A stretch of DNA of 64,000 nucleotides from Macrostomum lignano (Eukaryota): NCBI GenBank assembly GCA_002269645.1, contig NIVC01000006.1, forward strand, positions 682,001 through 746,000, written 5' to 3'. Position 1 is the first letter of the stretch; each line of letters begins with the position of its first letter. Below, piece after piece: positions 1 to 41,254 of the stretch. Position numbers and translations under genes: made by a program. The notes below the pieces were generated by a model. That model saw only the letters and a program-made list of their open reading frames with translations. It did no database searches and was not told where the DNA came from.

Positions 1-3000
1 GTATTAGGATGGCTCTTCCGCGACGTGCACTTTGCATCGGATAGTACGGAGAAGAATCTGGATCGTCTGGACCACCACCATCATCGCCACCACCGCCACC
101 ACCTCCACCACCACCACCGCCATCATCGCCACCACCACCACCGCCACCATCGCCACCACCACCACCGCCATCTCCGCCGTGGCCGTTGCCTCTGTCGCTT
201 GGCTCCTCCACAGGAGAGTTGGATGGATCGCCGCTCTCTTCAGGTTGGTAGCCGCAGCCAGTTTCGCTATCAATACTTAATCCACTTTCGCTTCCTTCGC
301 TTGTTGGAGCGCGCTGTAATCTAAAATTATAATATTTTTTATTGTCTGTGTTTGAATACTAATCCAAAGTAACTACAAGATCAAGATGCAATAGCAAATA
401 ACTTACATCAAGCGTGAACAGTTGAGGTGACCCGAAAACTTCGCCCATTGATAAGCGTTCATATTCCTCTCTCCGGTCAGGCGCCAATAGTTCGCGTCTT
501 TCATCAACTCTCCGAATATTTCAATGACCTCGATGTGGCCGCAGCGAGCAGCCCAGATCAGAGGTGTGTTGCCGAAGCAATCTTTCAGCCATAAATTTGC
601 TCCGAAGTCACACAACATTTTGAAAGTTCCTGCGTGTCCCTTTTTCGCTGCGTGGACGGCAGCTGAGTATTTAAAAACGTCCTGAAAAACAATTGCATTT
701 TCTTAGGGTTTCATTCATACCAAAAAGGTTTAAATTTTTAACCTCACCTGGCAATCTATATCAGCTTGCATTTTGATGAGCTGCTCCAAAACAGATTTCT
801 GGTCATTTATGGCCGCCAGAATCAGCGGGGTTTGTCGAAGATTATCTTCTCTATTTACTTCTGTCGTCATAGTGCTAGCGTTGTTTGTCAATATTTTCTC
901 AAACGCTATCAGGACTTCTTTGTGGCCTTTGAGGGCGGCCCAGGAAATGGCTGTCCGACCCATTACATCCTGGACACTGACCAGGGATGTGTCAGAATTT
1001 CTATTGAGCAGCGATAGTACCAGGTCATGTTTGCCTCTGGCGGATGCGATTGTTAGCAGAGTCTGATTCAAAGTCCCAAACTTGTGGGCTGTATTCTCCT
1101 GAGATCTGCACAGGGCTGCAAGCTGCGCGTCCGACCACTTATCCGGGGACGCAGAGCTGAATATCCTAATTTGTGATGCGATAGATGGATGTAATGGATG
1201 TGATACGAGTATCTTTCACTTTTGATAGCCCCAGATGTATAGCATTTTATTTGTCTATCTAATAAAATAACAATTAAAACATCAAATGGAATTTTATTAT
1301 CAATGGTTGCTAATAAAGTTTGTACTTAAGAGATTAAAGCAGTGGTATCTGCGGATGTCTAAAACCAAGAAACATGGCTAACAGTGACAATAACTTACTG
1401 CACATCGTCAGATGCAGCGCTATTCAAGAAGAATTTCTTGGTCAGACTGGTGACTGCAGAAGCTTCAGTACCGAATTTTTCGGATCCACCTTTCATCTCG
1501 GGTATGCCCAGCCGCCTGTTCACCTCTGCCACCACGTTCACAATGTGCTCTTTGCTGAATATTTCCTCTTGAACGACGGAGCATAGAACCTCAGCAAGCG
1601 ATCCATTCTCTCCTAGTGAGCCACCGCGGCAGAGAAGAAAGTCTTTCTCAGGAAGTTTAAACGACGTCTCTTCCAGCGGGCAGGCGTTCAGGGTTTCAGG
1701 CTGCTGCTCAGTCTGAACAAAGAAGATCTTCGGTTTGCCCTTTAGAAAGGAGCACTGGTTGACTCGGAACCTGGCCACGATGTCTCTTACTTCGACCTCT
1801 TCACCGTCGCTAGCGAAGAAGCTGGCACCGGTCCCGTGTCCGATGATGAAGCACACGAAGCTGCCCATGTCGGGGAGATCGGACCTGACTATTTTGTTGA
1901 CCGCTGCAAAGATGTCAGCGCTAGTAGGCTTACTTGTGCATTGTTGGATTGTAAAACCAAGGTTTTCGAAGGTGTCGGTAATTATTTTAACTTCCTTCTG
2001 TTGGTTGTGGCTTGAGCTGCGATTGTAGGTCTCGACACTTATTACCAAGCACAGGCCTTTTGCCGTAATGATCTCTGCGTATATGTCGCTTTCCGGCTTG
2101 TTTGAAGTTGAACTGAATGAAAAGGTGCCAAATAGATTTCCATATATTTTCGCCACAATGATTCGAAAGATTCAAATTTTAGCAAAGATTTGTGTGAAGC
2201 TGACTTACGCGACAACTTGCTCTTTGCCAATCCTAACATGCGAATGAGCCCCATCAAACTGTAGCTCATGTTCCTCTTGGCCTTCCGTTTCAAACGCAGG
2301 AACCTTGCACGTCAGTCCTCCTTGTTCTGGTTTAGAAAAAATGTTTAAGTTAGTACTAGATGTACGTCACCTGGTGCCAGTGGCCAAAATATCCGGTCAA
2401 TTCGATATTCAAGCCTAGCCTTGTACGAAAAGCATGCATGTAGTTGCTTTACCTTTATTATAGATGAGAGGGTGCTTCATCAACTCAATAGCCAGCGTCC
2501 GGTCACGAGCTTGTTTTTTAGTGCATTTGTCATAGAAATCTTTCAGATTAGCCGAGCAACTTTCCGGAAGCACTGGAGCCCCCTGCCGTTCCACCCGGCG
2601 AACAATGGCCAGCATGTTCTTGCACTCCCAGTAGGGCCGTTTGGCGATCACCATCTGGTAGATCACGCAGCCGAACGCCCACACATCGGAGGCGCAGCTA
2701 TAGGGAGGGTCCTCGGTCTCAGAAGACAGGAACATCTCAGGCGCCATGAAGTGCGGGTCGCCTCTCTCCCCAGTGGACGGATGCTCCGTTACTGTTTGGA
2801 GAATCTGGATGGCCAGACCGAAATTGACGATCACAATTCGATCGCCCGGACAAACGAGCACCGTCTTGCAGTTGATGTTGCGGTGAATCACCGGATCGTT
2901 GAGACCGTGCAAATATGAAAGGGCGTCGCATATCTGAAATCAGTCGGTGATTCAGGATTTTAATATCGTAGTTTAAATAAGAATGGTGTAAGAAAGCAGC

Positions 3001-3556
3001 CGAACACGTTTTTAAAACCATTGCCAATTTTTACTGTCGTTTAAAAAAGTGGTCATGGACTTCTTAGTAAAGTCGTGTATTTTTTTATTAGCTCATTAGC
3101 TCGTAGAAGTCATTAAGACCCTTCGAGTACCCTTCAAGCCCTGGCTGGGTTCATGGCATAACAAACTTTCGATAATGTACAATTTTACAATTATTTATTA
3201 CGCACCTGTCTTGTAAGATTACAAATGCTCTTCTCAGGCAAGCCTTGTTGGGCGGTGATATGTCGTTCCAGAGTTACCGGTCCCGAAAGCAAGCTCATCT
3301 GTACGGTCACGCACATCTGCTCCTTGTCCACCATGATGCGCTTGAATTTGACCACGTTTTTGTGATCCAATGCGCACAGTTTCTTAGCCTCTTTGTCGCA
3401 AGCCTTAGTCAGAGTTTCTAGCTTATCATGAGCTCCAGCTTCGACAAGATGCCATGGCAAGCGGATTTGTTTTACAGCCTGCAGTTGCTCTGCCTCGCCC
3501 ACCGCTTCGGCGTAAGTTTCGCCTCGATCGCCTCTCGATAGAAGCTCCCGGACCAT
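1..3556 (-). CDS. Multidomain pseudokinase - pseudo-caspase - ankyrin repeats - Gly linker - caspase-like protein (paralog L; 3' end runs off the window)
   Basis: Hand-spliced exons on minus strand: 3556-3206, 2933-2453, 2326-2209, 2112-1399, 1156-748, 681-407, 320-<1. All introns are GT-AG and all junctions are in frame (phases 0,1,2,2,0,2), giving 889 codons in the window. Kinase motifs QAVK, HRNINCKT, NFG, FMAPE, DVWAFG. Caspase motifs KGLCLVI, FVCFIIGHG, LKGKPKIFFVQ. Ankyrin motifs GRTAISWAA, QTPLILAA, GNTPLIWAARCGH. Last exon reads ...GGGGDDGGGPDDPDSSPYYPMQSARRGRAILI, which is the typical caspase p20 N-terminus. Confidence 0.88.
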
Positions 3557-4780
3557 TGCTTGGCTTAGGGGAGAGTTTCAAAACAGTGTTTTACAGCTTC
3601 ATGTGAGCTTCAAATTTACCTGCAATTTTTTGCTAGTGCAGTTAATGTTTAACTGCAGTGTTTCTGCTTAGCCGTAAGAAAGTGGCAAGGCTTTTTAAAA
3701 GCTGTCTAGCTATAGTGTCATTGGTAGCAAGCTTACTCTGCCAAATAGAGGCTTGTTTCTCTTGCCATTATAATACCTTATCTGTCTTTTCTCTTTTCTA
3801 CCCCTATTTTTGTATGAAGAATTAAGTACAGTCTAGACAAGTACTTGCGTTGTAGGGTATAGACTGGGAGAGAAGTAATCTGGGGGAGGGTTAATGTACA
3901 TTAAGTACAGCACATTGCTGTCAGGCAGCATTCTGGAGAGTTTTACACACTGCTTTGCATATCAAATTGAAAAGAAAAGAAAAATAGTACAGCAAGAGTT
4001 GCATTTCATACCCATTTGTGCAGACGTTGTCTCTTGGCTCTCATGCCATTCCATAGCCAGCAATTCTTATCTATAGAACTTGCTCTCGTAGCATGGAGGC
4101 TTAAAACCAACTGGTTTGTAGTTAGAAATTTGGTACCTTATTCTACTGTACAGCGCTTTCCGCCTAGCTAGCTAGTGCAGCCAGTCCCTATCTGTCCTAT
4201 TTTAGAAAGAAACAGTCATTTGGTATATGAATAATAGCTAATTTCTCACTTAGTAGCTATATGTGAATTCGCTATTGGTAATTTCAACTAGCGGCCGTTG
4301 CTCACAGAAGCTTGTTGCAAACTTTTTTTGCCTGTAAAAAACTGTTGAAACATAACAACTAGTGAGAATTAAACAATCGCGAGTGCGACTGTTTGTGGCT
4401 TAAATACAAGGTAAGAAGCTTCACGACAAGTGCTTATTAGCTAATCGTACCAGCTTTTGTAGGTCCAAGCGACATGTAGCCCCTGTCAGTGACTCCGGGA
4501 GGCGTGGCGGGCCACATCATCCACGCCGAGTCACACTGCCCACAGGCGGAGTAGGAGGTGCTGCTGCTAGCGCTGCAAACGGGGAGGACAGACATGGGCT
4601 CGGCGCTTGTTAAACTGCCTTCTGGCTGACGACCGCGCACGCTCAAGCCTTCACACACGCTCTGTGGCGTGACGCTGCATTATACTGTTTTATTATCGTG
4701 TATGCATATAGGCTATCTGGGGTTAAATAATTATCCTATCTGTTGCTTTGTCCGAAGATATTTACGTTGACAAAAGACCG

Positions 4781-6144
4781 CAATGAGGCGGAAGGCCTTT
4801 TATTTTCAATAGATGTGCGGTGCGCACATGTGGCGTGGCGTGATTGGCTACGCCAACCCCCCTGGCTTAGCCAGCCGGCTAGCGCGGTACGCCACCACCC
4901 CACCTCAGCTAGACAGAGGTTGGCGGGGGGGGGGGTTTCCAGTGCGGCTGCACTGGTGCTGCCGGTCGCGTAGTCTGGCCGCCACACAGCTCCCCCCAAC
5001 ACCGAGCTAGGCCCCGAATGTCAGGTGATAGCCGTGCCGAGGAGCGGGCGCCGAAAGCATCGGAGGCAGAGGCGCCGAAGGCTGCGGAGCTGCAGAGGAG
5101 CGGGCGCAGAAATCAGCCGGGCCCCGAAGGCGGCAGGAGTGCGAGATGAGCGCAGAAGGCTGCCAGGGCACGAGGCGGGCGCCGAAGGTGGCAGAGGCGC
5201 GAGGCGGGCGCCGAAGGCGGCAGGGGCGCGAGGCGGGCGCCGAAGGTGGCAGAGGCGCGAGGCGGGCGCCGAAAACGGCAGGGGCGCGAGGCAGGCGCCG
5301 AAGGCGGCAGGGCGCCGAGCGGGCGCCGATGGCAGCAGGGCGCCGAGCGGGCACCAGGCGGGCGCCGAAAGCAGCAGGGGTGCCAGGCGGGCGCCGATGG
5401 CAGCAGGGGTGCCAGGCGGGCGCCGATGGCAGCAGGGGCGTCAGGCGGACGCCGATGGCAGCAGGGGCGTCGGCGGGCGCCGAAGTCGGCAGCGCGCCAG
5501 GAGGGCGCCAAAGGCAGCAGCAGGGGCGCGCGGCCGGACCAGACCAGAGGCAATCGACAGTCAGTTGCCGCCGTGAGCCGGGTCGATGCTCCTGCACAGA
5601 GGCTGGGGACGTTAGGCTAGCAGCAGCGGTGCTAACCTAGAGTTTGCTGCAGCGTGTGGCGCTGGTTGGTCCAACGCGGGGGCCGAAAAGCGAGACCCCA
5701 GGAGCTACCGGGGGGCGGGCTGACTGGGCCGATTCGTGCGGGGTACTGCTGTGGCTGCGGGGCTGCTGTGCTGCCGTTGCAGTCGGCCAAGGCAGTTGGC
5801 TGCCAGGACCGCACAGGGCCGACCAGGTAGGCCCAGCGTTCCGCGCTGGGAGTCGGGCTCACCAATGAGGCGGAAGGCCTTTTATTTTCAATAGATGTTG
5901 TGGCAGCGAAGATTGTGCACTGCGTTGCGCGTATATATTTATATGATTGAAAACAGCGCGAGATTATTGAGGGGCCTAGGGAGGTGCGCACATGTGGCGT
6001 GGCGTGATTGGCTACGCCAACCCCCCCCCCCCTGGCTTAGCCAGCCGGCTAGCGCGGTGCGCCACCACCCCACCTCAGCTAGACAGAGGTTGGCGGGGGG
6101 GGTTTCCAGTGCGGCTGCACTGGTGCTGCCGGTCGCGTAGTCTG
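4781..6144 (+). mobile_element. Element bounded by ~197-bp direct repeats (4781-4977 and 5863-6144, the second with an ~85-bp insertion) around a GC-rich core; type unresolved
   Basis: CAATGAGGCGGAAGGCCTTTTATTTTCAATAGATGT...GGTCGCGTAGTCTG occurs twice almost identically. No clear TG..CA ends, TSD or coding capacity seen. Confidence 0.5.
5040..5525. repeat. GC-rich ~29-bp minisatellite (GAGGCGGGCGCCGAAGGCGGCAGGGGCGC-like)
   Basis: Repeated AGGCGGGCGCCGA core visible; explains the low-complexity ORFs in several frames on both strands. Confidence 0.85.
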
Positions 6145-6178
6145 CCCCCCACAGCAACCTATTTTCCTTCACTTCAGC

Positions 6179-9100
6179 ATGGTCAAAAACTACTCAATCG
6201 GGGAACAGATCGGTCGAGGCGAGTATGCTAGTGTCCATGCCGTCACCATCAAGGACCGGAGCCCAACAGCCACTTGTGTAAAGCTGATCAAACTGCCAAC
6301 GAACTCTGAGCAAGTCTTAGACAAAAAAGAGCTCACTGAATTGGTAGAAAAACACAAGCCACTCAGAGAACTGAAACACCGGAACTTGATTCAAATTGAA
6401 GACCTTCATGTCATTCAACAAGACTACTCTATCGCAGTGTTCATGGAGCGGTTTCAAGGAAAAACATTGGAATATTTACTGAAAACAAAGGGTGCCATCA
6501 CCCAAGAAGATAAGATTCGGCACTACTCCAAGCAGGTGAGCACTGCATGGATTTCTATGACGTGTTAATTCACAAGCCCCATAACCAAACAGTCTCTGAC
6601 TTATTTCTAATTAATTAGTTGGTTTTTTATTTAATTAAGCACAATTCTCAACTTCTCTGCAGATCTGTGAAGCTTTGAAGTATCTTCACCACGACTTAAA
6701 GGACCCCGTCATTCACAGAAACATCTGCAGTAAAACAGTTATGATAGACGACAACGATTTAGTTAAGTTAATTGACTTTGGCATCTCCATTCAGCTGATT
6801 GATGCGGTGAGCCATCAGGTGACGCAGTGTCCGAGAGGCCATCCGAACTACATGGCTCCAGAGTTGTTCTTGGAGGAATCCCGCTCTGAAGTCCAGAGCC
6901 TCTACAGTCGGGGCTCAGACATCTGGGCTTTCGGTTGCGTTGTGTACGAGATGACCACTGGTGCGAAGCCGCTTGGAGATTGCAGAAACATGCTGGCCAT
7001 AGTTAACAAAATCAAATATCACGGAGCTCCAAACCTACCGGAGGCGAGCTCTGAGCAGCTGAGAGACTTCTATAAAGGCTGCATGAGAATGAATAGGAAA
7101 GAGAGAATGTCGGCAGCAGATCTGCTACGACACGAGTTTCTCAGTCCTGGTATGCAATTTTATGGTTTTTTGAGCTACATGTATATTTTTCACTGTTATT
7201 TTGGCTAGTTGTTAACTGATATAAGCTCTCTTTTAGTATATGACAAACACTGGGACAATGTCCGTCTGCTGAGCAGAGGAGGCTTCGCAGAAATTCACGA
7301 GGCTCTCACGGACAAGGGTATCCGTTGCGCCGTAAAAACTCTGAAGCTGCCCCTTCAACTCGGTGATCAACGGGACAAAGTGCAGAGAGAAACCGATCGA
7401 GCTATTGAAAGCGAGATGAACCTGTGCAGATTACGGCATGACAACATCGTAAAGATCTTTGACATTTTGCAGCCAGAAATTGCCACGGTTGTTGTGTTCA
7501 TGGAGCTGCTGGATGGCAAAACTTTGGAATTGGTGATAGATGGAAAACCACTGGATGAGGGAATGATTCGTCTTTTCGCTTCACAAGTAAGCATGAATAC
7601 TGAGTTGAATTATCAGGTTTGCTCATTATCCTGATCGCATTACTTTCGTTTACTCATATTTCAGATCTGCAGCGCACTTAGCTACATGCACAATCAGCCA
7701 GAAAAATCAGCCGTGATTCACAGAGACCTCAACTGCTCAAATATCGTGATTCTAGATGATAACAAGGTCAAGTTGATTGATTTTGGCTTATCGCACAGGC
7801 TAGGAACGTCGATTAGTCACAGCACCGCCTCGTCAGTGAAGGGCACGCTGAACTTCATGGCGCCGGAGCTACTGGGTGACGACGAAAAAATTGTGTACAG
7901 CACAGCATCAGATGTCTGGGCATTCGGTTGCGCCGTCTACCAGATGGCCACTGGAGAGCGGCCGTTCGAGAAAATTAAAAACCTAAATCGTCTTATTCAC
8001 ACTCTGAAAGAGCAAGGCGCCCAATTATTGCCAGATTCTTGTTCGAGTCTGCTGAAAGATTTCTATGCCAGTTGCGTTATGCGCCAGCGCTTGGAGAGGG
8101 CGTCCGCTATAACGTTGATGAAGCACGAGTTTCTGACTTTCAAGTAAGTCTGCTTGCATTTTGTCTATTAAAGTTCATATTTTTGTATCAACGATGGCTC
8201 TGTATTTTTGTACTTTTAGTCGAGCATATTGTTTCTTTTAATTCCTTTAATTAGAGCCTCGGAGTACGAGGATGAAGACCGATACGAATCCAGTGCTAGC
8301 CAGAAAGGAATGTGCGCAATCATTGACATGCTCCCATCTGGCTCGGACTCAAAACTCTCTGCTAAAATCAGCAAAAGTTTTGAAAAGTTCGATTTCATCG
8401 TCAAGTCGCTACCAGACGCAACCTGTCAAACCGCTTGGAGCTTCATCGGGGACATCGCAAACAGTCAAGAGCTTGCAGACTCGAAATGCTTTGTTTGTTT
8501 TGTTATAGCTTCCGGTTCGAACGGACATCTGTACTCAGCTGACAATGATGAGAGCATTGAAATCAGAGATCTGCTTGCCAGGTTTCGCTCTAGCCAGTGT
8601 CCCAGCCTGAAGGACAAGCCGAAGCTTTTCTTCATTCAGGCCGCGCAACCGGCCAGTGCAGCCGCCGGCTTGGACGAATCCACGACGCGAATTCGAGACG
8701 ATGACTTTCTGGTTTGCATCAACGATGCCGACCTGGATTCATCGTTTGTCGGGACATTGTGCACCGTTTTAGAAGAGGACAAATTTAGCGACTTAGACAT
8801 TGAAGGAGTTGTGGATGAGGTGAACAATCGCCTAAAACTGGAACCGTTGGTTAAAGCGAAAAACCGGGCTCTTAAATCCATGTCGGAAGCAGTTTCCACT
8901 TTGACGAAGAAATTTTACCTGAAGCCGGAACCGGTGAAACCGGATCCCAGGTGAGCTTTTTCGTTGTTTTAGAGGCTTATTGAGAAGAATGCACAAAAAT
9001 TAGCTAAATCAGCAACACTAATTGCTGGTATTCGAGGAGCACTTCATCCTGCAGACAAACAAGTTTCCAGTACCACCACCGAACTAACCTACTTATTAAC

Positions 9101-12100
9101 CTACTATTATTAACCTATTCGTCCTACTTTAACCTAATAAAGTAGGTTAGGTTAAGTTAAAGTAGGTTAGGTTAAAGTAGGTTAAAGTAGATTAGGTTAA
9201 AGTAGGTTAAAGTAGGTTAGGTTAAAGTAGGTTTATATTTTAAATATCATATTTAAAATGATCATATTTTAAATTATATATTAAACGATCATATTTTAAA
9301 TGATCGATACTCAATGAAACGATTGGGCCCGATGATGCCATCTTTGATCACTTCCACCACAAGAGCTTTATTTAAAACAGTTGTTTAGTGAATAGGAGGG
9401 ATTTCTTATTCTTCCCATTGATTCATACTGTTTAGCATAGAAAGATAACGAATATTTCAGAGCGGAGTCGCCAGAAAAGTGGGACGATGAACAATTGAAG
9501 AGGCTAATAGAGGAGGAGGCAAGTCAATGCGCGAACCCGGACTTCACCAGCCAAAAGTACGGCCCGTTAGGACAGACGCTGCTGTCGATCGCAGCAGACA
9601 AGGATAGCAGCGAGTTAGTCAAGCTTGCGCTCCAGACGGCGGCCACTTTTCCATCCATTCACTCAGATCTCGACGTGATGGGCAGGACGGCCCTTTCCTG
9701 CGCCGCAGCCAAAGGATCAGACGCGGTTCTGGCCGCTTTCGAGCAGGCATTCATCGATGCGGCCGATGTTCAGAAATCAGTGGTCAACGAAGCCAACTAT
9801 ATGCGCCAGACTCCTATCATTGTGGCAGCCAAGCAAAACAGGACGAATGTTCTCGAGAAGTTGGTCCGGATGGGAGCAGATATCAATCAGAAGGTGAGGC
9901 TGTGTTGATACTCACTAGTTTTACTCAACTATCAATCACAAAAATGTCCTATCAACTCTGAATCACAAAAACAGACAGAGACAGAAAGAAACAATCATGA
10001 TAGAAACCAAAGGCTGATTCAGTTCAAGAAGCAACTTTATCGCCTTTATCAAAGAGCTCAGGAACTTATACAGCGCAGACACATCCGCCCGGCCTCTGCA
10101 CGACCAAGCATGATGTTCTCTTTTACTGCCTCGATGACGGCCTTCTTAAAGCCATTGAAATGAAACAAATATGTTTGCGTTTTGCGATTGCCTACCTGCT
10201 TTCACGTTGGGTTTTTAGGAATTTTGAGACGCTTTAGTCCCGGTTCCGTCAGCAAGCTCTACTGCAGCATGGCCGGTTCCAAGGACCAGGCTGCCAAAAT
10301 TTAATTTTCAAAACAGTCGATTCTCTTTCGAAGTGTAGAACCCTTTTGCACTTTTTTCCGTATTTCAAGCACCTGGCAGGCAATTCGAATTCTTCCGATC
10401 AACTTGCTGGCTTCATGCTGCTCACATAATCCTTATCCAGATGCATCTTGCGGCAAAACGTTTGAAGGGTTTTAACTCTGGGTCTATAGTCGTCTGATCT
10501 GTATGACCTTTAGCATTTGTAAACATTCGATATTTGGCTACAAGTGGCCACTGGCCAGTTAGTGTTTATGACGTATGGCGTCTCTACGCTCGTACATTTC
10601 ATTATATTTGATTTCGTAAAAATTCTGCACATGCAGCTTATATATATGAATTTGCATTTCAGGATATTGTAGAAGCCACCGCATTAATCTACGCGGCTAA
10701 ATTCGGATTTGTTGACGCGGTGCGCAAGCTGCTGGAACTCGGCGCCGATGCAGCTCTCGCAGACCGTTCGGATCAAACACCGCTAATTTGGGCAGCTCGC
10801 TGTGGCCACACCGATGTTATCAACGCTCTATCTGAAAAGTTCAATAGTCTGGAGCCCTGGAACCACCGGAGCACGCGGTTGCGCAACTTAACCGCGCTTG
10901 AATGGGCTAAGCTCTGCGGCCATGATGCCACTGCGGACAGGATTCAGCAGCTGTAAGTAATTGGCGACGTAATTTTTGTTCCAATGGCTGAATGCTCTGT
11001 AGAAATCTGCACCTCCTGCTTTAATGGGCGTAGGAAATCGGCCGTCACGAGGGTCCTCCGTTTCCACCAGACCATTTAAAATTTTTCCGTGAATATCCTC
11101 TAAGCTACTTTAAACTTTTTCCTGTCTTGAACCCTCACAATGACACCCAGGAGCCATCCATGATCCTGTTAAGCCATTAAGAAGTTTTTAATTATTTAAA
11201 TATTTTAAATGATCGATGCAAACTATTTCAGAATTCAACAGATAACCGGAGCGACACAGGAGGCGGACGCCACTACCGACCCACAATCAAGGGGTGGCGG
11301 TGGCGGTGATGACGGTGCCAGTAGTGAAGCGACAGGAACTTCCGCCGGAAGTAGCCACGGAAGCGGAGGAAGCGGCGGCGGAGCCGTTGGTGGAGGAGGT
11401 GGTGCTGATGAAGTTGGTGGAAGGGGTGCCGGTGGCGGAGGTGCCGGTGGCGGAGGTGGTGGTGGCGGAGGTGGTGGTGGCGGAGGTGGCGGTGGCGGAG
11501 GTGGTGGTGGCTGGCCTATTTACCATATGAACAACCCAGTCAGAGGCCTAGCAATAGTTATCAGTCGGAACACGATTCCACCAAATGCAGGTTTTCAGAA
11601 CATACATTGGATGCCGGATCAGCAGACTCAATCTTTTGTCGGTTGTTTAAGCGACCTACGCTTCGATTTCTTAGTGCTACCAAATATTCCGAGAAACCTT
11701 TATTATAATCTCCGAACCACGGTACTCAATTGGCCGACGTATGCCACCTCTGATTCTCTTCTCCTCTGCCTGATGTCTTATGGCGAACACGGCCGAGTGT
11801 ATGACTGCAATGGAGAGCGTGTTGAGCTGGAAACAATGTTTCGACAGTTCAGAGAGTGTCCACTGCTCTCTGGTAAGCCGAAAATATTCATGGTCGATGC
11901 TGGTCGTGACATTCCTCATGAGAGACTGGTGTTGGAGCAGGCAATTCAGGAGAACGCGGGCCAGCACCAGGACTGTAATTACATTTACAGTGTTGTAAAA
12001 GGAAACGCCTGCTACCAAGAGGTAGAGAACGGCTTTTGCTTCATGCAGTCCATGGTGAATTTACTGCGCTGGCCAAGTTTCGATTCAGCCACGGAAGATT

Positions 12101-12210
12101 TTGCGTCCTTTCTGACGAAAGTCGTCAGCGACGTGTCGAACAAGTGCACAGCAAAGCAGATTGTCTGCCACACGAGCACCTTGCAGCGCCATATCATTTT
12201 AGGAAATTAA
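6179..12210 (+). CDS. 1356-aa tandem kinase (pseudokinase + kinase) - pseudo-caspase - ankyrin repeats - poly-Gly - pseudo-caspase protein (paralog R)
   Basis: Exons 6179-6535, 6663-7149, 7237-7586, 7665-8143, 8255-8950, 9461-9893, 10663-10952, 11232-12210 total 4071 nt (1357 codons). Every GT-AG junction keeps frame. Kinase 1: GRGEYA, CVK, HRNICSKT, DFG, YMAPE. Kinase 2: CAVK, HRDLNCSN, DFG, GTLNFMAPE. Caspase A: FVCFVIASG, LKDKPKLFFIQAAQ. Ankyrins: GRTALSCAA, QTPIIVAA, QTPLIWAARCGH. Caspase B: YHMNNPVRGLAIVI, LMSYG, LSGKPKIFMVDAGRD. Confidence 0.9.
9065..9310. repeat. Degenerate AGGTT(AAAGT) simple repeat with an upstream inverted copy, followed by AT-rich ATATTTTAAATGATC repeats (intron 5 of paralog R)
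   Basis: AACCTAC/CCTACTTTAACCTAA units precede AGTAGGTTAGGTTAAAGTAGGTT units. Confidence 0.65.
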
Positions 12211-13372
12211 CCCGAGAACTCGTAATTTTTATGACGCTGATCCTGTAAGGTAAAATGCATAAAGTATATTTACTTTTATAATTTCATCTGGTGACAGTGT
12301 CTCGTTATTTTCATCCAGTTGCTTTTCCTCCAACTATCTAAAAATTGTTTTAATGTGGGGATCCAATATAAACCCAGATGATACTACTTCAAACTAATCA
12401 AACAGACCCGTGTGGCAGTGAGAAAACAAATTTAAGTTAAGCCTAAATCCTAACCGACGACTGATATTATAATTTTCGTATACTGCGCACTTCGATTGCT
12501 TGTTGGGTTTTAACATTAACATTTATTGTTGTTATCTTTTGTTTTTTCGATGCTTTTATGATGACGTCAATGTATACATTTGATTCACCTACATATCCTA
12601 CTTTGTATACTGAATGATTTTTTTGTATGTTTTAAAAAAATTGTTATAGACAAAGCAGTTTAACATAATTAAATCTTTATTAGGAATAATGTATTGAACT
12701 CAAAAAGTTGTGTATTAGATTGCATCTACAAACTACATGTAATTGGAACTTGCAATGCCCCTGAATATACAGCCGCTGGTTTTGTTTGCTAATGAGGGAC
12801 AGAGGCTCCCTCCATCGTGTGAATTTCCCGCCGAAACTATACGGAAAATGTTACAATTTTATACCGCACCCAATTTGTTTGAATGCGCCGCACCCCCACC
12901 CCCTTTTACTAAAAATACAAGAACGTTTTTTCACCCGTGAATTCTAACTTGGCCCTTGCTGGCAGCGCTCATTTTTTTCTCTAATAATACCTAAGTAACT
13001 GACGGATCTTTCCAATATAGTTTTTCGTATTAGCTAGAATCGGAAAAGCAAGTGCAAATTGGCTGGGTGGGAAAACCAAGTCGTGCAGTAGTTTTGCTTC
13101 AGGGCGCCAAATGAGTGCCTGCGGCGCCAATATGAGTGCCTGCGGCGCTAAAATGCTAAATTGAGTGCGGCGCCAAAATGAGGCTAGTGCTAACAGCACC
13201 GCTTTTCAAAATAATGTAGGAATTTAGCCATGTAGACTTCTTGGCTTTGTCCCCCACTATAAAATCCATGGTGACGCCCCTGGCTGTAATTATCTTAAAA
13301 AGTGCTAATTAAAAATCAATCTTATAATATCTTAAAAATCTGGGGACCCCACATACAGGTGGTGAGACATGT

Positions 13373-14025
13373 CAGTGGCGTATACTCGAGAATTTTATTT
13401 GCAGGATTTGCAACATTACAGAGACCAGTATTTGGTCTCTAGGTTAATACCTCGATCGCTTGTTGGGCGCCCCTGTCTCTTGGTGGGTGCCCCTGTCTCT
13501 TGGTGGGCGCCCCTGTCTCTTGGTGGGCGCCCCTGTCTCTTGGTGGGCGCCCCTGTCTCTTGGTGGGCGCCCATATCTCTTGGTGGGCGCCCCTGTCTCT
13601 TGGTGGGCGCCCCTGTCTCTTGGTGGGCGCCCATATCTCTTGGTGGGCGCCCCTGTCTCTTGGTGGGCGCCCCTGTCTCTTGGTGGGCGCCCCTGTCTCT
13701 TGGTGGGCGCCCCTATCTCTTGGTGGGCGCCCCTGTCTCTTGGTGGGCGCCCATATCTCTTGGTGGGTGCCCCTGTCTCTTGGTGGGCGCCCCTGTCTCT
13801 TGGTGGGCGCCCCTGTCTCTTGGTGGGCGCCCCTGTCTCTTGTTGGGCGCCCATATCTCTTGGTGGGCGCCCCTGATCTCTTCTAACAAGAGAAGGTAAT
13901 TAAACACGAGCCCCTCTGTCATTCGTCAAGCTCGCGGTTACCTCTTATTTAGTTTCTTGGGGATTACAATTATTATAAAGGGGCCATTGGGGGGGGCACC
14001 TCCACCCTAGCTGCGTACGCCACTG
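13373..14025. mobile_element. hAT-like MITE (653 bp) with an internal 20-bp minisatellite
   Basis: 10-bp TIR CAGTGGCGTA...TACGCCACTG; perfect 8-bp TSD AGACATGT at 13365-13372 and 14026-14033. Confidence 0.85.
13445..13875. repeat. 20-bp minisatellite TTGGTGGGCGCCCCTGTCTC, about 21 copies
   Basis: Directly visible tandem units inside the MITE. Confidence 0.95.
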
Positions 14026-14396
14026 AGACATGTACAGCAGTAAGTTTTATTCTGCTGTACTTGTAAATATACCGGCATAATGTACTGCACATGTACACTG
14101 CAGTCTTTCACAAGCACTTGGACGATCGATTTAGTCTCATCTGTATTGTGGTCCAAAAGTGCAATGTACCTATACGAACATGTACTCTCAAGGACATCAA
14201 AAGTTTTTGGATTCTAAATTTAAATGTACTAGCTCTTTAATTAGGCTACTAGGGGGCAGAGCAGCCTATAGGCTCTCGCTCCATGACCTCTGGTTTATTG
14301 ATTCCCTGCGCAACCGCATTTGGGGTTGTGAAACGAAAAATTGGCCATGTGTGTTTTGTCGCCATGAGGGCCAACCCCCAATAAAGCACAGGGAGT

Positions 14397-14552
14397 GTAC
14401 ATGCCTGATGATTAGAAAGACAGTCAGGGCCGCTGTACACCTTGTGTGAGCTTTGTGTTAGACGTGACTGTGTACGCTCGTATAATATTAGCTTGCTTGT
14501 ATGTGCATCAGGAGAGTCAGTGGAATGGGAGGAACTGCCTCAGCGCTGGTTG
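14397..14552 (+). repeat. Dispersed repeat family copy 1 (related copies at 34948-35089 + and 44660-44771 -)
   Basis: Shared motifs GTACATGCCTGA..., GTCAGGGCCG.TGTACACC and GAGTCAGTGGAATGGG..GAA.TG.CTCAGCGCTGGTTG. Confidence 0.65.
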
Positions 14553-15757
14553 TGGGGCGATATCGCAAAAGAATTTTCGCCAGATTTTTGCGAGTATTAT
14601 TACATTTTTGTTACATTTTTGTACAAATATTATTGCATCTGAATATTATCGTATTATTTATATTTTAGCGAACGCTGAGCTTTTTGGTTGGACCGTGGAC
14701 CGATTTGCTCAGCTGCCATCGGTTGGGATTTTTTTCCAATTTTAATACGAATGTACATGCAGAGTTTATGCAACACCGCCAGATCCCCAGTGAAAACTCT
14801 GCAGCTTCTGACGAAAACTTAGACGAAAACCCCAGTTTTTGTGTCCTTTTTGTATTACTCTTCTTTAATCCTTCACATTTCGGGACTTGAGTGGATATAG
14901 AATTTCTTCGTTAATTTTCTAACTTTTACTCGCCATAACTCCTCAAACTCCCATCGATGACGGTCTACATATCTTCTCAACGCAACTTGAAATTAACACA
15001 TGAGATATGACAGTTGCTACGTGTAGATGTAAACCCAAATTTCTTACCACATATCTAGTATCGCACCCAGTGGTACTATTAATTTGCTATTAAAAATTCG
15101 AAACACTGCACGTACATACGCAAATAAGCCGCGAATTTTCCCTCCCTCATTTATAAACAGCAACGCTAAAAGTAGCGCCTTTAATTACAAGCCTTTGAGG
15201 GCCAAATTTGTCTTCCGAAACTCACTAGATACTTATAAGCAGAGATTTTAGATTTTTCTTAGCTCTGAGTAACCTACCATACCATCAGAAATATATCTTG
15301 CTAAAACTAAAACGCTACTATTAGTAGTAAGTAGTATAACAATAACATTGGTTGGTGCCCGTGAGTCGTGGGTGGGACATCGGTTAAAAATTACAAGTTA
15401 AACGGTAATTTGAATTTAATGTTGGCAAGCCTGCAGAAAATCTTAAAGCAAATCATAAAAGCAGTAGCATCTGAAATCAGTTATTTACTCCCACGACTAT
15501 CTGTTTTTAAAGTTTGAATACCTCAGCAGTCCGAGATTCTTTATATGCATAGCAAATTTGTTTTAACCGTAAAACAATTTTAAATGCAGTTAATTTTTGA
15601 AGAAAAATATGTACAAATCATCATCATGATTTTTGCAGCAGGTGCACCATTCACGTTAGCATTAAATTGTTGTGTTTATTATTAGAACCAAAAATTGAAA
15701 GCTCAACATAAACATTTTTTAGTTTAAAAAAAAAACAAATCGAAATATTTAAAGGTC

Positions 15758-18700: not shown

Positions 18701-21700
18701 GCATTTTTGTTAAAACTAAGTCGCACAGCCAACAAAATTTTGGAGGTTGCGCATGTATGAGCAAGACACTTAACTCTGCATTGCTTTAGTTCACCCAGCT
18801 ATAAAATGGGTGCTAGTATTAGCTGGGATAATTGAGGGTGTATGTGGCAACCCCCTAGTCCTTGGACTGAACAGCTATATATGGCCTTCAGATGTGCCAT
18901 GCAATAGCTATGGCTGAGCTGTTGGTTGCACATCTGCTTATTATGGCAGATATAATCAATTATTATTATAATAATTATTATTATTAATTATATTATTGTT
19001 AATATTGCAATATAGAACTTATAAAGGTTGAATTTAGCCAAAATAGTAATTAAAAAATATAGTATCAAAGTAACAATCTTTAAATTTTTCTAAGATTTGT
19101 TAGTTGAATATTCCTAACTACATATTGTGTAATACTAGTGCCAATGTGAAAGGAAAATAAAATTATTTTAAAAAAATTTCTTTCCTCACAAAACTTTTAG
19201 CCTGCTTACTTTGGACCAGTGTGCCAATAATACTTTTGAAAACATTGGTCAGCAAGTGCAGAAGTATTTTACTAAACAAGATGGATTCAAGGTTGGCACT
19301 GCTTTGGTAAGTAGAAGAATGCTTCATATGCCATTTTTAATACTTTAATGGTAGAATTTGTGTTCAATTGTTAAAGGCAGGTGGGTGAAAGGTTGTGAAG
19401 GGAGGTCAGTGAAGGGAGGTGGGTAAAGGGAGGTGGATGAAGGGAGATGGAATGATGGATGAAAGGAGGTGGGTGAAGGGAGGTGGGTGAAGGGAGGTGG
19501 TGGAGGGAGGTAGGTAAGGGAGGTGGTGAAGGGAGGTGGGTGAATGGAGGTGGTGAAGGGAGGTGGGTGAATGGAGGTGGTGAAGGGAGGTGGGGGAAGG
19601 GAGGTGGGTGAACGGAAGTGAGGTTAAAAATGAACACCGACAGTTTTTGCATTCTCATCTCGCATTCTCTTCGCCAGGTGTTGCTCCTGCAGAACCCCGA
19701 TCTGCTGCCTAATCGGATGCAACAGCTGGTGGCTCTCTACCTGCTCTTGGAGTTGACCCGAGTTGACCCGCCCAATGTGAACCCATTTCAACCCGCGTTT
19801 GTTTACGCCATGCGATCGGACGAGAACGATACGAGGCATTTTCGCGTTCCCTGCCTGCCGCTGCAGGAGCGCGTGTTCTTGTACAGCCTGCTGCAGAGCA
19901 CCCACGCCAGCGGCCAGCCTTCTAGGGAACTCTTGAAGAAAACCCCTCAGCAGGTTTGTAAAACTGTTGGTGTCTGTCATCTTGAAATGCATGAGTCAGT
20001 GTTTCATTAATCATTTCGAGGCCATAAATCATATATCTGCAACCAAAAATCATCATTCAGAAACTAAAAATCATCATTCAGAAACCGAAATCATCATTCA
20101 GAAACTAAAAATCATCATTCAGAAGCCATAAATCATCATTCAGAAGCCATAAATCATCATTCAGAAGCCATAAATCATCATTCAGAAGCCATAAATCATC
20201 ATTCAGAAGCCATAAATCATCATTCAGAAACTATAAATCATCATCAAAATCCAAGAATCATCATTCAGAAACCATAAATCATCATTCAGAAACCATAAAT
20301 CATCATTCAGAAACCATAAATCATCATTCAGAAACCATAAATCATCATTCAGAAGCCATAAATCATCATTCAGAAGCCATAAATCATCATTCAGAAGCCA
20401 TAAATCATCATTCAGAAGCCATAAATCATTACTCAGAAACCATAAATCATCATTCAGAAACAAAAAATCATCATTCAGAAACCATAAATCATCATTCAGA
20501 AACCATAAATCATCATTCAGAAACCATAAATCATCATTCAGAAACCATAAATCATCATTCAGAAGCCATAAATCATCATTCAGAAGCCATAAATCATCAT
20601 TCAGAAGCCATAAATCATCATTCAGAAACTATAAATCATCATCAAAATCCAAGAATCATCATTCAGAAACCATAAATCATCATTCAGAAACCATAAATCA
20701 TCATTCAGAAACCATAAATCATCATTCAGAAACCATAAATCATCATTCAGAAACAAAAAATCATCATTCAGAAACCATAAATCATCATTCAGAAACTATA
20801 AATCATCATCAAAATCCAAGAATCATCATTCAGAAACCATAAATCATCATTCAGAAACCATAAATCATCATTCAGAAACCATAAATCATCATTCAGAAAC
20901 AAAAAATCATCATTCAGAAACCATAAATCATTACTCAGAAACCATAAATCATCATTCAAAAACCATAAATCATCATTCAGAAACCATAAATCATCATTCA
21001 GAAACCATAAATCATTACTCAGAAACCATAAATCATCATTCAAAAACCATAAATCATCATTCAGAAACCATAAATCATTACTCAGAAACCATAAACCATC
21101 ATTCAAAAACCATAAATCATCATTCAGAAACCATAAATCATAATTCAGAAACCATAAATCATCATTCAGAAACCATAAATCATTACTCAGAAACCATAAA
21201 TCATCATTCAGAAACCATAAATCATCATTCAGAAACCATAAATCATCATTCAGAAACAAAAAATCATCATTCAGAAACCATAAATCATTACTCAGAAACC
21301 ATAAATCATCATTCAAAAACCATAAATCATCATTCAGAAACCATAAATCATCATTCAGAAACCATAAATCATTACTCAGAAACCATAAATCATCATTCAA
21401 AAACCATAAATCATCATTCAGAAACCATAAATCATTACTCAGAAACCATAAACCATCATTCAAAAACCATAAATCATCATTCAGAAACCATAAATCATTA
21501 CTCAGAAACCATAAATCATCATTCAGAAACCATAAATCATTACTCAGAAACCATAAATCATCATTCAGAAACCATAAATCATCATTCAGAAACCATAAAT
21601 CATCATTCAGAAACCATAAATCATCATTCAGAAACCATAAATCATCATTCAGAAACAAAAAATCATCATTCAGAAACCATAAATCATTACTCAGAAACCA

Positions 21701-36556: not shown

Positions 36557-36654
36557 TGCAAAAAGATTTTTTTATTAAAACACCTTAAAAACACAACAAA
36601 ACTGCTAAACATCAAAGAAGCGCAATGTCAAACATAGAAGAGCCAACATATCGA

Positions 36655-41155: not shown

Positions 41156-41254
41156 ATTTACACAATTTCAAACGTAAACGTAAGCGTCATGCCAATTTTA
41201 AAGGAGCCACTATAGAGCTAAGGAAATTGTAGCACTAGCTACTTATTGTATGGT

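What the first reader, a model, noticed from the sequence alone, without database searches (positions are those of the whole stretch)
6179..12210. Single polypeptide fusing tandem kinases, two caspase-fold domains and ankyrin repeats: candidate undescribed death/immune signalling scaffold
Seen: the six-frame track shows separate ORFs, but all seven introns splice in frame into one 1356-aa ORF (kinase - kinase - caspase - ANK - poly-Gly - caspase). Known: kinase+ANK (RIPK4, ANKK1), ANK+pseudokinase (RNase L) and pseudo-caspases (c-FLIP) exist separately. I do not recall a characterised animal protein with kinase and caspase domains in one chain. Inference: a sensor/adaptor coupling ANK-mediated recognition or caspase hetero-dimerisation to phosphorylation, e.g. 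in innate immunity or regulated cell death.
Basis: partly seen in the sequence, partly recalled or inferred. Interest (0 to 1): 0.92.

Follow-up and report, generated by a model that had tools for sequence, protein, structure and literature searches.

The report
Flatworm kinase–dead-caspase–ankyrin fusion gene
This is a real Macrostomum lignano (free-living flatworm) gene whose single 1356-residue protein joins a dead and a probably live kinase, ankyrin repeats and two caspase-like domains that cannot cut protein; it looks like a non-cutting regulator of sister genes that keep a working caspase, the gene is already in GenBank, and the kinase-caspase combination has been noted once in print.

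Summary
Pfam finds two kinase domains, two caspase domains and six ankyrin repeats.

The window is 100% identical to Macrostomum lignano GenBank contig NIVC01000006.1. Its RNA-seq-based annotation already calls a gene at window 6179-12210 with a 1356-residue product, so the gene is not undescribed.

- **Caspase domains:** both lack the catalytic His and Cys (C1 SGS/QAAQP, C2 SYG/DAGRD).
- **Kinases:** kinase 1 is a pseudokinase (HRN). Kinase 2 keeps all core motifs.
- **Family:** the gene belongs to a Macrostomum family with the order kinase, pseudo-caspase, ANK, Gly-rich linker, caspase.
- **Neighbour:** a second member lies head-to-head in the same window at 3556-1, minus strand, and is also Cys-less.
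- **Live pair:** a paralogous head-to-head pair on another contig (PAA89054.1 and the P0005 gene) keeps SHG/QACRG-type sites.

A 2024 paper already lists one M. lignano caspase with a kinase pro-domain. Independent kinase-caspase fusions exist in Daphnia and reportedly in Eisenia.

The most likely role is a protease-dead, FLIP-like regulator or scaffold with one live kinase. That role is inferred, not shown. I rate it a new variant of a known kind, of moderate interest.

The parts
5650..5826 (+). Probable non-coding 5' exon of gene A. Donor CAG|gtaggc at 5826/5827, spliced to the acceptor ...cacttcag|C at 6177/6178 just before the ATG.
   Evidence: The UniProt model P0001 starts with a translation of this stretch joined directly to MVKNYS. 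The sequence was read. The 5' end is approximate, and the exon is inferred from one public model only.
6179..6535 (+). Gene A exon 1: start codon and N-lobe of kinase 1 (aa 1-119).
   Evidence: Pfam Pkinase begins at aa 5.
6663..7149 (+). Gene A exon 2: C-lobe of kinase 1 (aa 120-281). It is a pseudokinase. HRD is HRN, the catalytic-loop Asn is Thr (HRNICSKT), and the alpha-C Glu is His. DFG and APE are kept.
   Evidence: Alignment to ASK1/MAP3K5 and the family alignment.
7237..7586 (+). Gene A exon 3: N-lobe of kinase 2 (aa 282-398). The VAIK Lys (CAVK) and the alpha-C Glu are present.
7665..8143 (+). Gene A exon 4: C-lobe of kinase 2 (aa 399-557). HRDLNCSN, DFG and APE are all present, so the domain is predicted catalytically competent.
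   Evidence: Alignment to PLK2 and the family alignment. It is 55-59% identical to the M. lignano ANK-kinase family.
8255..8950 (+). Gene A exon 5: caspase-fold domain C1 (aa ~558-789). It is a pseudo-caspase. SHG is SGS, QACRG is QAAQP, and the L3 substrate loop is deleted.
   Evidence: Pfam Peptidase_C14 E=1.3e-19, alignment to caspase-7, family alignment.
9461..9893 (+). Gene A exon 6: the conserved SPxKWxDxQL motif and ankyrin repeats 1-3 with the start of repeat 4 (aa 790-934).
   Evidence: Pfam Ank_2/Ank. Repeats were counted by eye from the translation.
10663..10952 (+). Gene A exon 7: ankyrin repeats 4-6 (aa 935-1030). It ends in a phase-2 intron.
   Evidence: The same phase-2 intron sits at the homologous position in gene B and in PAA89054.1/P0146.
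11232..11511 (+). Gene A exon 8, first part: Gly-rich low-complexity linker (aa 1031-~1125). An alternative acceptor at 11259/11260, used by the UniProt model P0001, shifts the frame and ends the product at 11530 without C2.
11512..12210 (+). Gene A exon 8, second part: caspase-fold domain C2 (aa ~1126-1356) and the stop codon. It is a pseudo-caspase. SHG is SYG, QACRG is DAGRD, and the S1 Arg of the L3 loop is Gln.
   Evidence: Pfam E=7.5e-17, alignment to caspase-3/-8, AlphaFold2 pLDDT 82 and pTM 0.83, Foldseek TM ~0.8 to caspase-3/-7/-8, family alignment.
1..3556 (-). Gene B, a paralog lying head-to-head with gene A. Exons are 3556-3206, 2933-2453, 2326-2209, 2112-1399, 1156-748, 681-407 and 320-<1. 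Domain order is pseudokinase (HRN, NFG), pseudo-caspase (GHG, VQTEQQ), ANK, poly-Gly linker, then the start of C2. The gene runs off the left edge of the window. The rest of C2, read from L003, has SHG but QANRG (Cys to Asn).
   Evidence: tblastn, sequence, spliced model with no stops, UniProt A0A1I8GSX3 and GenBank PAA94593.1 plus a 243-aa piece.
4819..6153 (.). Intergenic region between the divergent genes. It holds a ~170-bp direct repeat (4819-4986 and 5983-6153, 95-100% identical) flanking a GC-rich 29-bp tandem array (5109-5534) and the putative 5' exon.
   Evidence: A promoter function was not tested.

Best explanation
**Shown**

Window 6179-12210(+) is one transcribed gene of the flatworm Macrostomum lignano. 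It encodes a 1356-aa protein with this order of parts:
1. Pseudokinase K1 (HRN, with the catalytic Asn and the alpha-C Glu lost).
2. Kinase K2 with an intact motif set.
3. Pseudo-caspase C1 (no His, no Cys, no L3 loop).
4. Six ankyrin repeats.
5. A Gly-rich linker.
6. Pseudo-caspase C2 (His to Tyr, Cys to Gly).

The gene belongs to a Macrostomum-specific family with the conserved order kinase-like, C1 pseudo-caspase, ANK, Gly-rich linker, C2 caspase, and with conserved intron positions. Family members sit in head-to-head pairs. On another contig the pair P0005-gene / PAA89054.1 keeps SHG plus QSCRD or QACRG in C2. In this window both partners, gene A and gene B, have lost the C2 cysteine. Gene A has also gained a second kinase (K2) from the species' large ANK-kinase family.

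**Inferred**

Gene A cannot cleave substrates. It most likely acts as a c-FLIP-like, non-proteolytic partner of the live family caspases. It would bind them through caspase-fold dimerisation, and possibly through the ANK repeats, and either hold them inactive or template their activation. K2 would be its only enzymatic output, and K1 a JAK-like regulatory pseudokinase. The pathway (regulated cell death, stress or immunity) is a guess from the domain types and from the lineage-specific, rapidly diversifying nature of the family.
For: - **Gene model:** in-frame GT-AG splicing, and identical span and product length in the transcript-based GenBank annotation. Exons 1-7 are identical in UniProt A0A1I8GSV6.
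- **Last junction (ANK to linker-C2):** a phase-2 intron at the homologous site in gene B and in GenBank PAA89054.1. Paralogs P0005 and P0146 carry the same domain order in one CDS.
- **Domains:**. The C2 fold is supported.
- **Dead caspase sites:** alignments to caspase-7, -3 and -8 and the family alignment.
- **Kinase states:**
- **Live versus dead paired loci:**
- **Lineage restriction:** among the 150 best of 1.84 billion representatives for K2+C1, only Macrostomum proteins contain a caspase domain.
- **Intact ORF:** 4071 nt over 8 exons, with K2 motifs and the caspase structural core kept. This argues for continued constraint.
Against: - No expression level, interaction or activity data exist for this gene.
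- I could not read the GenBank protein itself.
- UniProt models of this gene and its near-copy stop before C2 (P0001 uses an acceptor 28 nt downstream; P0002 ends at exon 7). A C2-less isoform is therefore possible.
- K2 has Asn in place of the catalytic-loop Lys (HRDLNCSN) and a weakened Gly-loop (SRGGFA), so its activity is not certain.
- The M. lignano genome is recently duplicated and redundant, which would allow relaxed selection. I could not compute dN/dS.
- Heterodimerisation with live paralogs is argued by analogy only.
Confidence: 0.6

Rival explanations
1. Gene A is a transcribed but functionally decaying duplicate. After the locus was duplicated in the recently polyploid M. lignano genome, the A/B pair lost its caspase active sites and is drifting toward pseudogenisation. 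It has no regulator role.
For: Both caspase dyads are lost in gene A, and Cys is lost in gene B. K1 is degenerate. The genome carries large-scale redundancy. The repeat-encoded poly-Gly linker suggests tolerance of slippage.
Against: There is no stop or frameshift in 4071 nt across 8 exons, and all 14 splice sites are canonical. The K2 catalytic motifs are fully retained. C2 still gives a confident caspase fold (pLDDT 82, TM ~0.8). The C1-type pseudo-caspase is conserved as 'dead' in every paralog, including those with a live C2. Loss of catalytic residues is therefore a stable, long-standing state in this family and not recent decay.
Confidence: 0.17
2. The locus does not make one 1356-aa chain as its main product. 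Either the C2 exon is expressed separately (polycistronic precursor resolved by spliced-leader trans-splicing, or an internal start at ATG 11209 or Met ~1131), or the main isoform uses the 11259/11260 acceptor and ends before C2.
For: About 7% of M. lignano assembled transcripts are polycistronic precursors. An in-frame ATG lies at 11209 inside intron 7. UniProt models P0001 and P0002 lack C2. GenBank splits gene B into an 846-aa partial product and a 243-aa C2 piece.
Against: The GenBank pipeline cut transcriptional units at experimentally mapped trans-splice and poly(A) sites, yet it still reports one 1356-residue product over 6179-12210. The reading frame is continuous through the linker. 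The intron position and phase are conserved in three paralogs. PAA89054.1 and P0005 have C2 in the same chain. The two gene-B pieces are in frame and separated by only 27 nt inside the poly-Gly repeat, which looks like an assembly break and not a gene boundary. No stand-alone M. lignano protein matching gene A's C2 turned up in the C2 search, which returned only proteins of 152-412 aa.
Confidence: 0.13
3. The protein is mainly a kinase-signalling protein or a tandem-kinase 'integrated decoy' sensor, analogous to plant tandem kinase-pseudokinase immune proteins. The caspase-fold and ANK modules would act only as baits or interaction surfaces, for example for pathogen or endogenous proteases or inhibitors. 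There would be no functional link to the live family caspases.
For: K2 is the only intact catalytic domain. M. lignano has a large, diversified ANK-kinase expansion with many accessory domains: tandem and triple kinases, Ras/Roc, a Mab-21_C-like domain and an ANF receptor domain. Such lineage-specific expansions with pseudo-enzyme domains are typical of conflict and immune gene families (general knowledge).
Against: The conserved co-linearity and paired genomic arrangement with live-caspase paralogs point to a shared pathway. There is no evidence of pathogen interaction. The sensor analogy is from memory, not tested.
Confidence: 0.1

Closest known systems
[quoted passage not shown]
   Same: They share the domain order, the exon-intron layout including the phase-2 intron before the linker-C2 exon, the C1-type pseudo-caspase, the SPxKWxDxQL motif before the ANK repeats, and the head-to-head gene pairing.
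   Different: Gene A has an extra, probably active kinase (K2) inserted after the family's pseudokinase. Its C2 has lost both His and Cys, whereas those paralogs keep SHG plus QACRG or QSCRD. The paper lists one such protein without an accession I could read, so which paralog it saw is unknown.
ANK caspases of parasitic flatworms (Lee et al. 2014, as cited in PMC11463336)
   Same: Ankyrin repeats lie directly N-terminal to a caspase domain in one chain. The paper places the M. lignano kinase-caspase as sister to this clade. M. lignano also has ANK-caspase proteins without a kinase (P0294, P0295).
   Different: Those are described as presumptive initiator proteases with ANK as the pro-domain. 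Gene A adds two kinase domains and a second caspase fold and has no catalytic dyad. I could not test the phylogenetic relation because no parasitic-flatworm sequences were retrieved.
c-FLIP(L) / caspase-8 (vertebrates)
   Same: Both involve a caspase-fold domain that has lost the catalytic Cys and His. Both arose by duplication of a live caspase gene and coexist with live paralogs, where it modulates them by heterodimerisation (established knowledge for FLIP). The live-pair versus dead-pair loci here mirror that logic.
   Different: There are no DED domains and no close sequence relationship. Gene A has two pseudo-caspase domains plus kinases and ANK. Heterodimerisation is untested.
JAK-type tandem pseudokinase-kinase proteins
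   Same: An N-terminal pseudokinase is immediately followed by a catalytically equipped kinase. JAK2 proteins appeared among distant hits because of the tandem arrangement.
   Different: There is no FERM/SH2 region. The kinases are closest to STE/MAP3K5- and PLK-like Ser/Thr kinases. K1 and K2 are only 38% identical and have different origins within the Macrostomum expansion.
Kinase + ANK proteins (RIPK4, ANKK1, DAPK1, TNNI3K, ILK)
   Same: They combine a protein kinase and ankyrin repeats in one chain. Several act in death or inflammatory signalling (established knowledge).
   Different: The best solved-structure matches are MAP3K5/MAP3K2/PLK, not RIPK or DAPK. None of these proteins carries a caspase fold.
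Daphnia magna XP_032778082.2 / KAK4020129.1 (UniProt name 'Caspase-8') and the Eisenia andrei kinase-domain caspase
   Same: Pkinase plus Peptidase_C14 in one predicted chain (PMC11463336).
   Different: The Daphnia protein has a kinase-like domain only ~20-24% identical to the Macrostomum ones (HRN, DFR). It has no ANK repeats and one live caspase (SHG/QACQG). It is an independent fusion.

Membership tests
Caspases (peptidase family C14A) | Caspase/hemoglobinase fold (p20+p10 alpha/beta sandwich) | tested here: met
   Peptidase_C14: C1 71 bits, C2 62 bits, against a cut-off of 21.4. phmmer to caspase-7/-3/-8 structures gives E 1e-15 and 1e-10. The C2 AlphaFold2 model has pTM 0.83 and Foldseek TM ~0.8 to caspase-3/-7/-8.
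Caspases (peptidase family C14A) | Catalytic dyad: His of SHG and Cys of QACxG | tested here: not met
   C1 has SGS and QAAQP. C2 has SYG and DAGRD. Both are pseudo-caspases.
Caspases (peptidase family C14A) | S1 pocket arginines (Arg179, and Arg341 on loop L3) for Asp specificity | tested here: not met
   C1 lacks the L3 loop entirely. C2 has Gln where the paralogs and canonical caspases have S-x-R.
Eukaryotic protein kinases: kinase 2 (aa 290-555) | VAIK Lys, alpha-C Glu, HRD Asp, catalytic-loop Asn, DFG, APE | tested here: met
   CAVK, ESEMN, HRDLNCSN, DFG and MAPE are present. The Lys of HRDxK is Asn, as I recall it is in LIM kinases (from memory). Activity is not testable here.
Eukaryotic protein kinases: kinase 1 (aa 5-279) | HRD Asp, catalytic-loop Asn, alpha-C Glu | tested here: not met
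   The motif is HRNICSKT (Asp to Asn, Asn to Thr) and the alpha-C Glu is His. DFG and the beta-3 Lys are kept. It is a pseudokinase.
Macrostomum kinase / pseudo-caspase / ANK / caspase family (PAA89054.1 type) | Co-linear domain order with a C1-type pseudo-caspase, ANK, Gly/Pro-rich linker and C2, plus shared intron positions | tested here: met
Macrostomum kinase / pseudo-caspase / ANK / caspase family (PAA89054.1 type) | Catalytically equipped C2 caspase | tested here: not met
   Gene A has SYG/DAGRD and gene B has SHG/QANRG. P0146 has SHG/QACRG and P0005 has SHG/QSCRD. Gene A is a dead member.
Flatworm ANK caspases | ANK repeats as the N-terminal pro-domain of a caspase domain | tested here: met
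   Six ANK repeats lie directly upstream of the linker-C2.
Flatworm ANK caspases | Phylogenetic grouping of the caspase domain with Schistosoma/cestode ANK caspases | not tested
   No parasitic-flatworm sequences were recovered. The only support is the published tree that places a M. lignano kinase-caspase as sister to the group.
c-FLIP-like pseudo-caspase regulators | Catalytically dead caspase fold derived from, and coexisting with, live caspase paralogs | tested here: met
c-FLIP-like pseudo-caspase regulators | Tandem DED pro-domain, and heterodimerisation with the live caspase | tested here: not met
   Pfam finds no DED, CARD or DD at E<=0.1. Heterodimerisation cannot be tested with these tools. 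The resemblance is one of working logic, not of family membership.
RIPK4/ANKK1/DAPK-type kinase-ANK proteins | Kinase domain orthologous to RIPK or DAPK | tested here: not met
   The best solved-structure matches are MAP3K5, MAP3K2, PLK2/3, TNIK and WNK at E 1e-21 to 1e-27. No RIPK or DAPK appears among the listed hits.

The most novel reading that the evidence does not exclude
The family may be a flatworm-specific, self-contained death or immune switch. In it, the always-dead C1 domain would pair within the same chain with C2 as a built-in FLIP:caspase-8-like heterodimer, gated by the N-terminal kinase module and the ANK repeats. The head-to-head 'dead' pair in this window (genes A and B) would have evolved as dominant regulators of the 'live' pair on the other contig. 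Gene A would add a working kinase so that caspase-fold engagement is turned into phosphorylation instead of proteolysis. If so, this would be a previously unknown way of wiring kinase and caspase signalling in one polypeptide.
Probability: 0.15. Interest if true: 0.75.

Novelty: new variant of a known kind. Interest (0 to 1): 0.45.

Why it matters
Caspase-kinase cross-talk normally happens between separate proteins, such as RIPK1/3 with caspase-8 and FLIP. Here one flatworm lineage has fused the two folds repeatedly. It has also produced both protease-live and protease-dead versions in paired loci.

M. lignano is experimentally tractable, with RNAi, transgenesis and regeneration and irradiation assays (PMC5730564). 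The family therefore offers a natural system for three questions:
- How do pseudo-caspases and pseudokinases regulate live partners?
- What replaced the extrinsic FADD/DED pathway, which has been reported lost in flatworms (PMC11463336)?
- Are ANK caspases older than parasitism?

The last point follows from an observation made here: the M. lignano kinase-caspases carry ANK repeats next to the caspase domain. That qualifies the published statement that free-living flatworms lack ANK caspases.

The value is limited by three things. The gene is lineage-specific, it is already annotated, and it has no functional data.

Tried and rejected
- **Profile search with the C2 domain.** It returned only short generic caspases of 152-412 aa. 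Hit lengths in all three searches stayed within roughly 0.55-1.75 times the query length. It therefore could not recover the multi-domain paralogs, and it found no stand-alone M. lignano C2 protein.
- **Exhaustive phmmer with K2+C1.** The listed top 150 are swamped by multi-kinase proteins. A home-made caspase HMM over all fetched proteins found caspase domains only in Macrostomum entries. This is not an exhaustive census of kinase-caspase fusions elsewhere.
- **ANK+C2 profile search.** It was dominated by ANK-only proteins. It did reveal ANK-caspases in Penaeus and a kinase-caspase in Daphnia, but no parasitic-flatworm ANK caspases.
- **Retrieving the GenBank 1356-aa protein.** The exact-sequence look-up says the sequence is not in the collection, and the locus table shows no Pfam record for it. 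The entry appears to be absent or masked, so the accession is unknown.
- **Supplements of PMC11463336.** They are not held, so the accession of the published M. lignano kinase-caspase could not be matched to a paralog.
- **Literature searches.** 'Mlig003293' and 'Peptidase_C14' + 'Pkinase' gave nothing relevant.
- **Downstream of the ANK-kinase-pseudo-caspase paralog P0007.** I looked for hidden ANK/C2 exons and found none. That paralog really ends after the pseudo-caspase.
- **Rejected: a chance concatenation of ORFs.** Kinase 1, kinase 2 and the ANK region are each split by an intron and are only complete after splicing, and GenBank has the same span and length.
- **Rejected: RIPK/DAPK orthology**.
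- **Rejected: any death-fold domain**.
- **Other checks.** No tRNAs in the window. dN/dS could not be computed because no DNA of the near-identical copy (P0002) is available.


Full report
**1. The observation**

I read window 5500-12800 and joined the eight exons implied by the finding: 6179-6535, 6663-7149, 7237-7586, 7665-8143, 8255-8950, 9461-9893, 10663-10952 and 11232-12210. Every intron starts with GT and ends with AG behind a pyrimidine-rich tract. The joined sequence is 4071 nt and translates to 1356 aa with only the terminal stop.

Three of the seven introns split a domain (kinase 1, kinase 2, the ankyrin region). Those domains are complete only after splicing. The remaining four junctions are in frame.

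**2. The domains**

Pfam on the whole protein and on each segment gives:

| Segment | Pfam family | aa range | E-value |
|---|---|---|---|
| K1 | Pkinase | 5-279 | 2.8e-45 |
| K2 | Pkinase | 290-555 | 1.1e-46 |
| C1 | Peptidase_C14 | 595-779 | 1.3e-19 |
| ANK | Ank_2/Ank | ~826-1027 | 2e-35 |
| C2 | Peptidase_C14 | ~1126-1354 | 7.5e-17 |

The ankyrin region holds six repeats by eye. A Gly-rich linker encoded by a 15-nt GGT/GGC repeat separates ANK from C2. No DED, CARD or death domain appears even at E 0.1. An AlphaFold2 model of C2 (pLDDT 82, pTM 0.83) matches caspase-3, -7 and -8 structures with TM about 0.8.

**3. Catalytic state**

Alignment to solved caspases and to paralogs shows:
- C1 has SGS for SHG and QAAQP for QACRG, and it lacks the L3 substrate loop.
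- C2 has SYG for SHG and DAGRD for QACRG, with Gln at the S1 arginine.

Neither domain can be a cysteine protease.

K1 aligned to ASK1 and to the family reads HRNICSKT: the catalytic Asp is Asn and the Mg-binding Asn is Thr. The alpha-C Glu is replaced by His. K1 is a pseudokinase that keeps DFG and the beta-3 Lys.

K2 aligned to PLK2 keeps the VAIK Lys, the alpha-C Glu, HRD, the catalytic Asn, DFG and APE. Its only oddity is Asn for the Lys in HRDLNCSN, which I recall also occurs in active LIM kinases (memory, not tested). K2 is therefore the one domain likely to be enzymatically active.

**4. Source and existing annotation**

The best protein matches are all from Macrostomum lignano. UniProt A0A1I8GSV6 (P0001) is identical through exons 1-7. 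It then uses an acceptor 28 nt downstream (11259/11260), shifts frame and ends at 11530 without C2. A0A1I8GSE8 (P0002) stops at the end of exon 7.

Looking up a neighbour's protein returned GenBank contig NIVC01000006.1 of assembly GCA_002269645.1 (L003). It is 100% identical to window 1-13556. In that record a gene is called at L003 1347-7378(-), which is window 6179-12210(+), with a product of 1356 residues.

Wudarski et al. 2017 (PMC5730564) state how the deposited annotation was made. It derives solely from StringTie/TACO assemblies of RNA-seq and a de novo transcriptome. Boundaries were set from mapped trans-splice and poly(A) sites (TBONE), and ORFs were called by TransDecoder.

I could not read that protein itself.

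**5. A family, and a second member in the window**

tblastn of the model and its paralogs against the window revealed a second gene on the minus strand, head-to-head with the first. I assembled it as seven exons from 3556 down to the left edge, with no stop. Its order is:
- pseudokinase (HRN, NFG);
- C1-type pseudo-caspase (GHG, VQTEQQ);
- ANK repeats;
- poly-Gly linker;
- the start of C2.

The rest of its C2, read from L003, has SHG but QANRG. UniProt A0A1I8GSX3 and GenBank PAA94593.1, plus a separate 243-aa piece, correspond to this gene. The two GenBank pieces are in frame and only 27 nt apart inside the Gly repeat.

On another contig (L002, NIVC01000166.1) a second head-to-head pair exists: the P0005 gene and PAA89054.1 (P0146). 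It has the same domain order, but C2 is live-looking (SHG/QSCRD and SHG/QACRG).

The intron between the last ANK exon and the linker-C2 exon is phase 2 at the homologous position in PAA89054.1, gene A and gene B. This independently supports the 10952/11232 junction.

Further paralog types are:
- ANK, kinase, pseudo-caspase (PAA..., BOX15_Mlig026099g1);
- ANK, kinase, live caspase (PAA47029.1 and copies).

K1 is the counterpart of the single kinase-like domain of gene B, P0005 and P0146. All four have Thr for the catalytic Asn and share the KNMLAIV motif. K2 is 55-59% identical to the large M. lignano ANK-kinase expansion and is an addition specific to gene A.

**6. Outside Macrostomum**

Among the 150 best of 1.84 billion representatives for K2+C1, only Macrostomum proteins contain a caspase domain.

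The ANK+C2 profile search found three things:
- ANK-caspases in penaeid shrimp;
- M. lignano ANK-caspases without a kinase;
- a Daphnia magna RefSeq protein (XP_032778082.2) with Pkinase plus a live caspase.

The Daphnia kinase is only ~20-24% identical to the flatworm ones. It is an independent fusion.

**7. Literature**

Genome Biol Evol 2024 (PMC11463336) surveys lophotrochozoan caspases. It reports ANK caspases as specific to parasitic flatworms. [quoted passage not shown]

The paper does not mention the following:
- the second caspase fold;
- the ANK repeats in the Macrostomum proteins;
- the tandem kinases;
- the dead and live paired loci.

I found no functional study.

**8. Interpretation**

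Shown:
- It is a single transcribed gene with the stated architecture.
- It has two dead caspase folds, one dead kinase and one intact kinase.
- It belongs to a lineage-specific family with live and dead paired loci.

Inferred: gene A acts without proteolysis, most plausibly as a FLIP-like partner of the live family caspases. K2 would be its output and K1 a JAK-like regulatory module.

The fact that C1 is dead in every paralog, including those with a live C2, suggests that a pseudo-caspase/caspase pairing is intrinsic to how the family works, perhaps within one chain. I could not test this because the structure tool gives no inter-domain contacts.

The rivals are relaxed-selection decay, a C2-less or split product, and a kinase-centred sensor role. 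Each is listed with its own tests.

**9. Verdict**

Relative to what is known, this is a new variant (tandem kinase, doubly dead caspase) of a kind already catalogued, namely flatworm caspase-family proteins with kinase or ANK pro-domains. Interest is moderate. It is an attractive, tractable pseudo-enzyme system, but it is lineage-specific and already annotated.

Noticed in passing
window 1-3556 (minus strand), continuing in L003 13557-14176: A second family member (gene B) lies head-to-head with the finding's gene. Its order is pseudokinase (HRN, NFG), pseudo-caspase, ANK, poly-Gly, then a C2 with SHG but QANRG. GenBank splits it into an 846-aa partial product and a 243-aa piece that are in frame and 27 nt apart inside the Gly repeat.
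   Followed up: yes
L002 (NIVC01000166.1) 3437-7997(-) and 10001-15370(+): A paralogous head-to-head pair (the P0005 gene and PAA89054.1) has the same architecture but intact SHG/QACRG-type C2 sites. The GenBank model of the minus-strand gene (PAA89053.1, 559 aa) is truncated. tblastn shows its ANK and C2 exons downstream.
   Followed up: partly
window 4819-4986 and 5983-6153; 5109-5534: A ~170-bp direct repeat (95-100% identical, 1.17 kb apart) flanks a GC-rich 29-bp tandem array in the 2.6-kb spacer between the two divergent genes. One copy ends 25 bp upstream of gene A's start codon. It could be a duplicated promoter module or a small inserted element.
   Followed up: partly
window 11259/11260: There is an alternative 3' splice site 28 nt inside exon 8, used by UniProt model A0A1I8GSV6. 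It shifts the frame into a Val/Ala/Glu-rich tail ending at 11530 and removes C2. It may be an annotation artefact or a real C2-less isoform.
   Followed up: no
window 8951-9460 (intron 5): The intron contains short AT-rich tandem repeats (TAGGTTAAAG-type at 9148-9233 and ATATTTTAAATGATC-type at 9235-9305).
   Followed up: no
window 9461-9500 (aa ~792-803) and paralogs: A short motif SP(D/E/S)(K/Q)W(D/S/T)D(E/A/Q)QL just before the ankyrin repeats is conserved in gene A, gene B, P0005 and P0146. It could be a proline-directed phosphosite or an ANK capping element.
   Followed up: no
window 22989-23612 (+): An ORF with a strong CNOT11 (CCR4-NOT subunit 11) domain, Pfam E=3.6e-52. This is an unrelated housekeeping gene downstream.
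   Followed up: no
window 13459-13882, 20022-22318, 23759-24538, 25047-25536, 26225-26882, 36607-41156, 45287-47192, 48886-49944, 54926-56342, 58413-58920, 59838-60222, 61660-61884, 62279-63610: The rest of the window is packed with long minisatellite arrays of 20-27-bp units, up to 4.5 kb and 198 copies, plus two (CTGT)/(GTCT)n microsatellites. These explain the long ORFs open in all six frames and the strong local skews. They fit the high tandem-repeat content reported for M. lignano.
   Followed up: partly
proteins P0003, P0004, P0008, P0011, P0015, P0019 (M. lignano, not in window): K2 belongs to a large M. lignano expansion of ANK-kinase proteins. Members include tandem and triple kinase domains and fusions to Ras/Roc and a Mab-21_C-like domain. 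The HRD(I/L)NC catalytic-loop variant is a hallmark of the expansion.
   Followed up: partly
literature versus data (PMC11463336): The paper states that free-living flatworms lack ANK caspases. Yet the M. lignano kinase-caspases, and the proteins P0294 and P0295, have ANK repeats directly upstream of the caspase domain. The ANK-caspase unit may therefore predate parasitism.
   Followed up: partly
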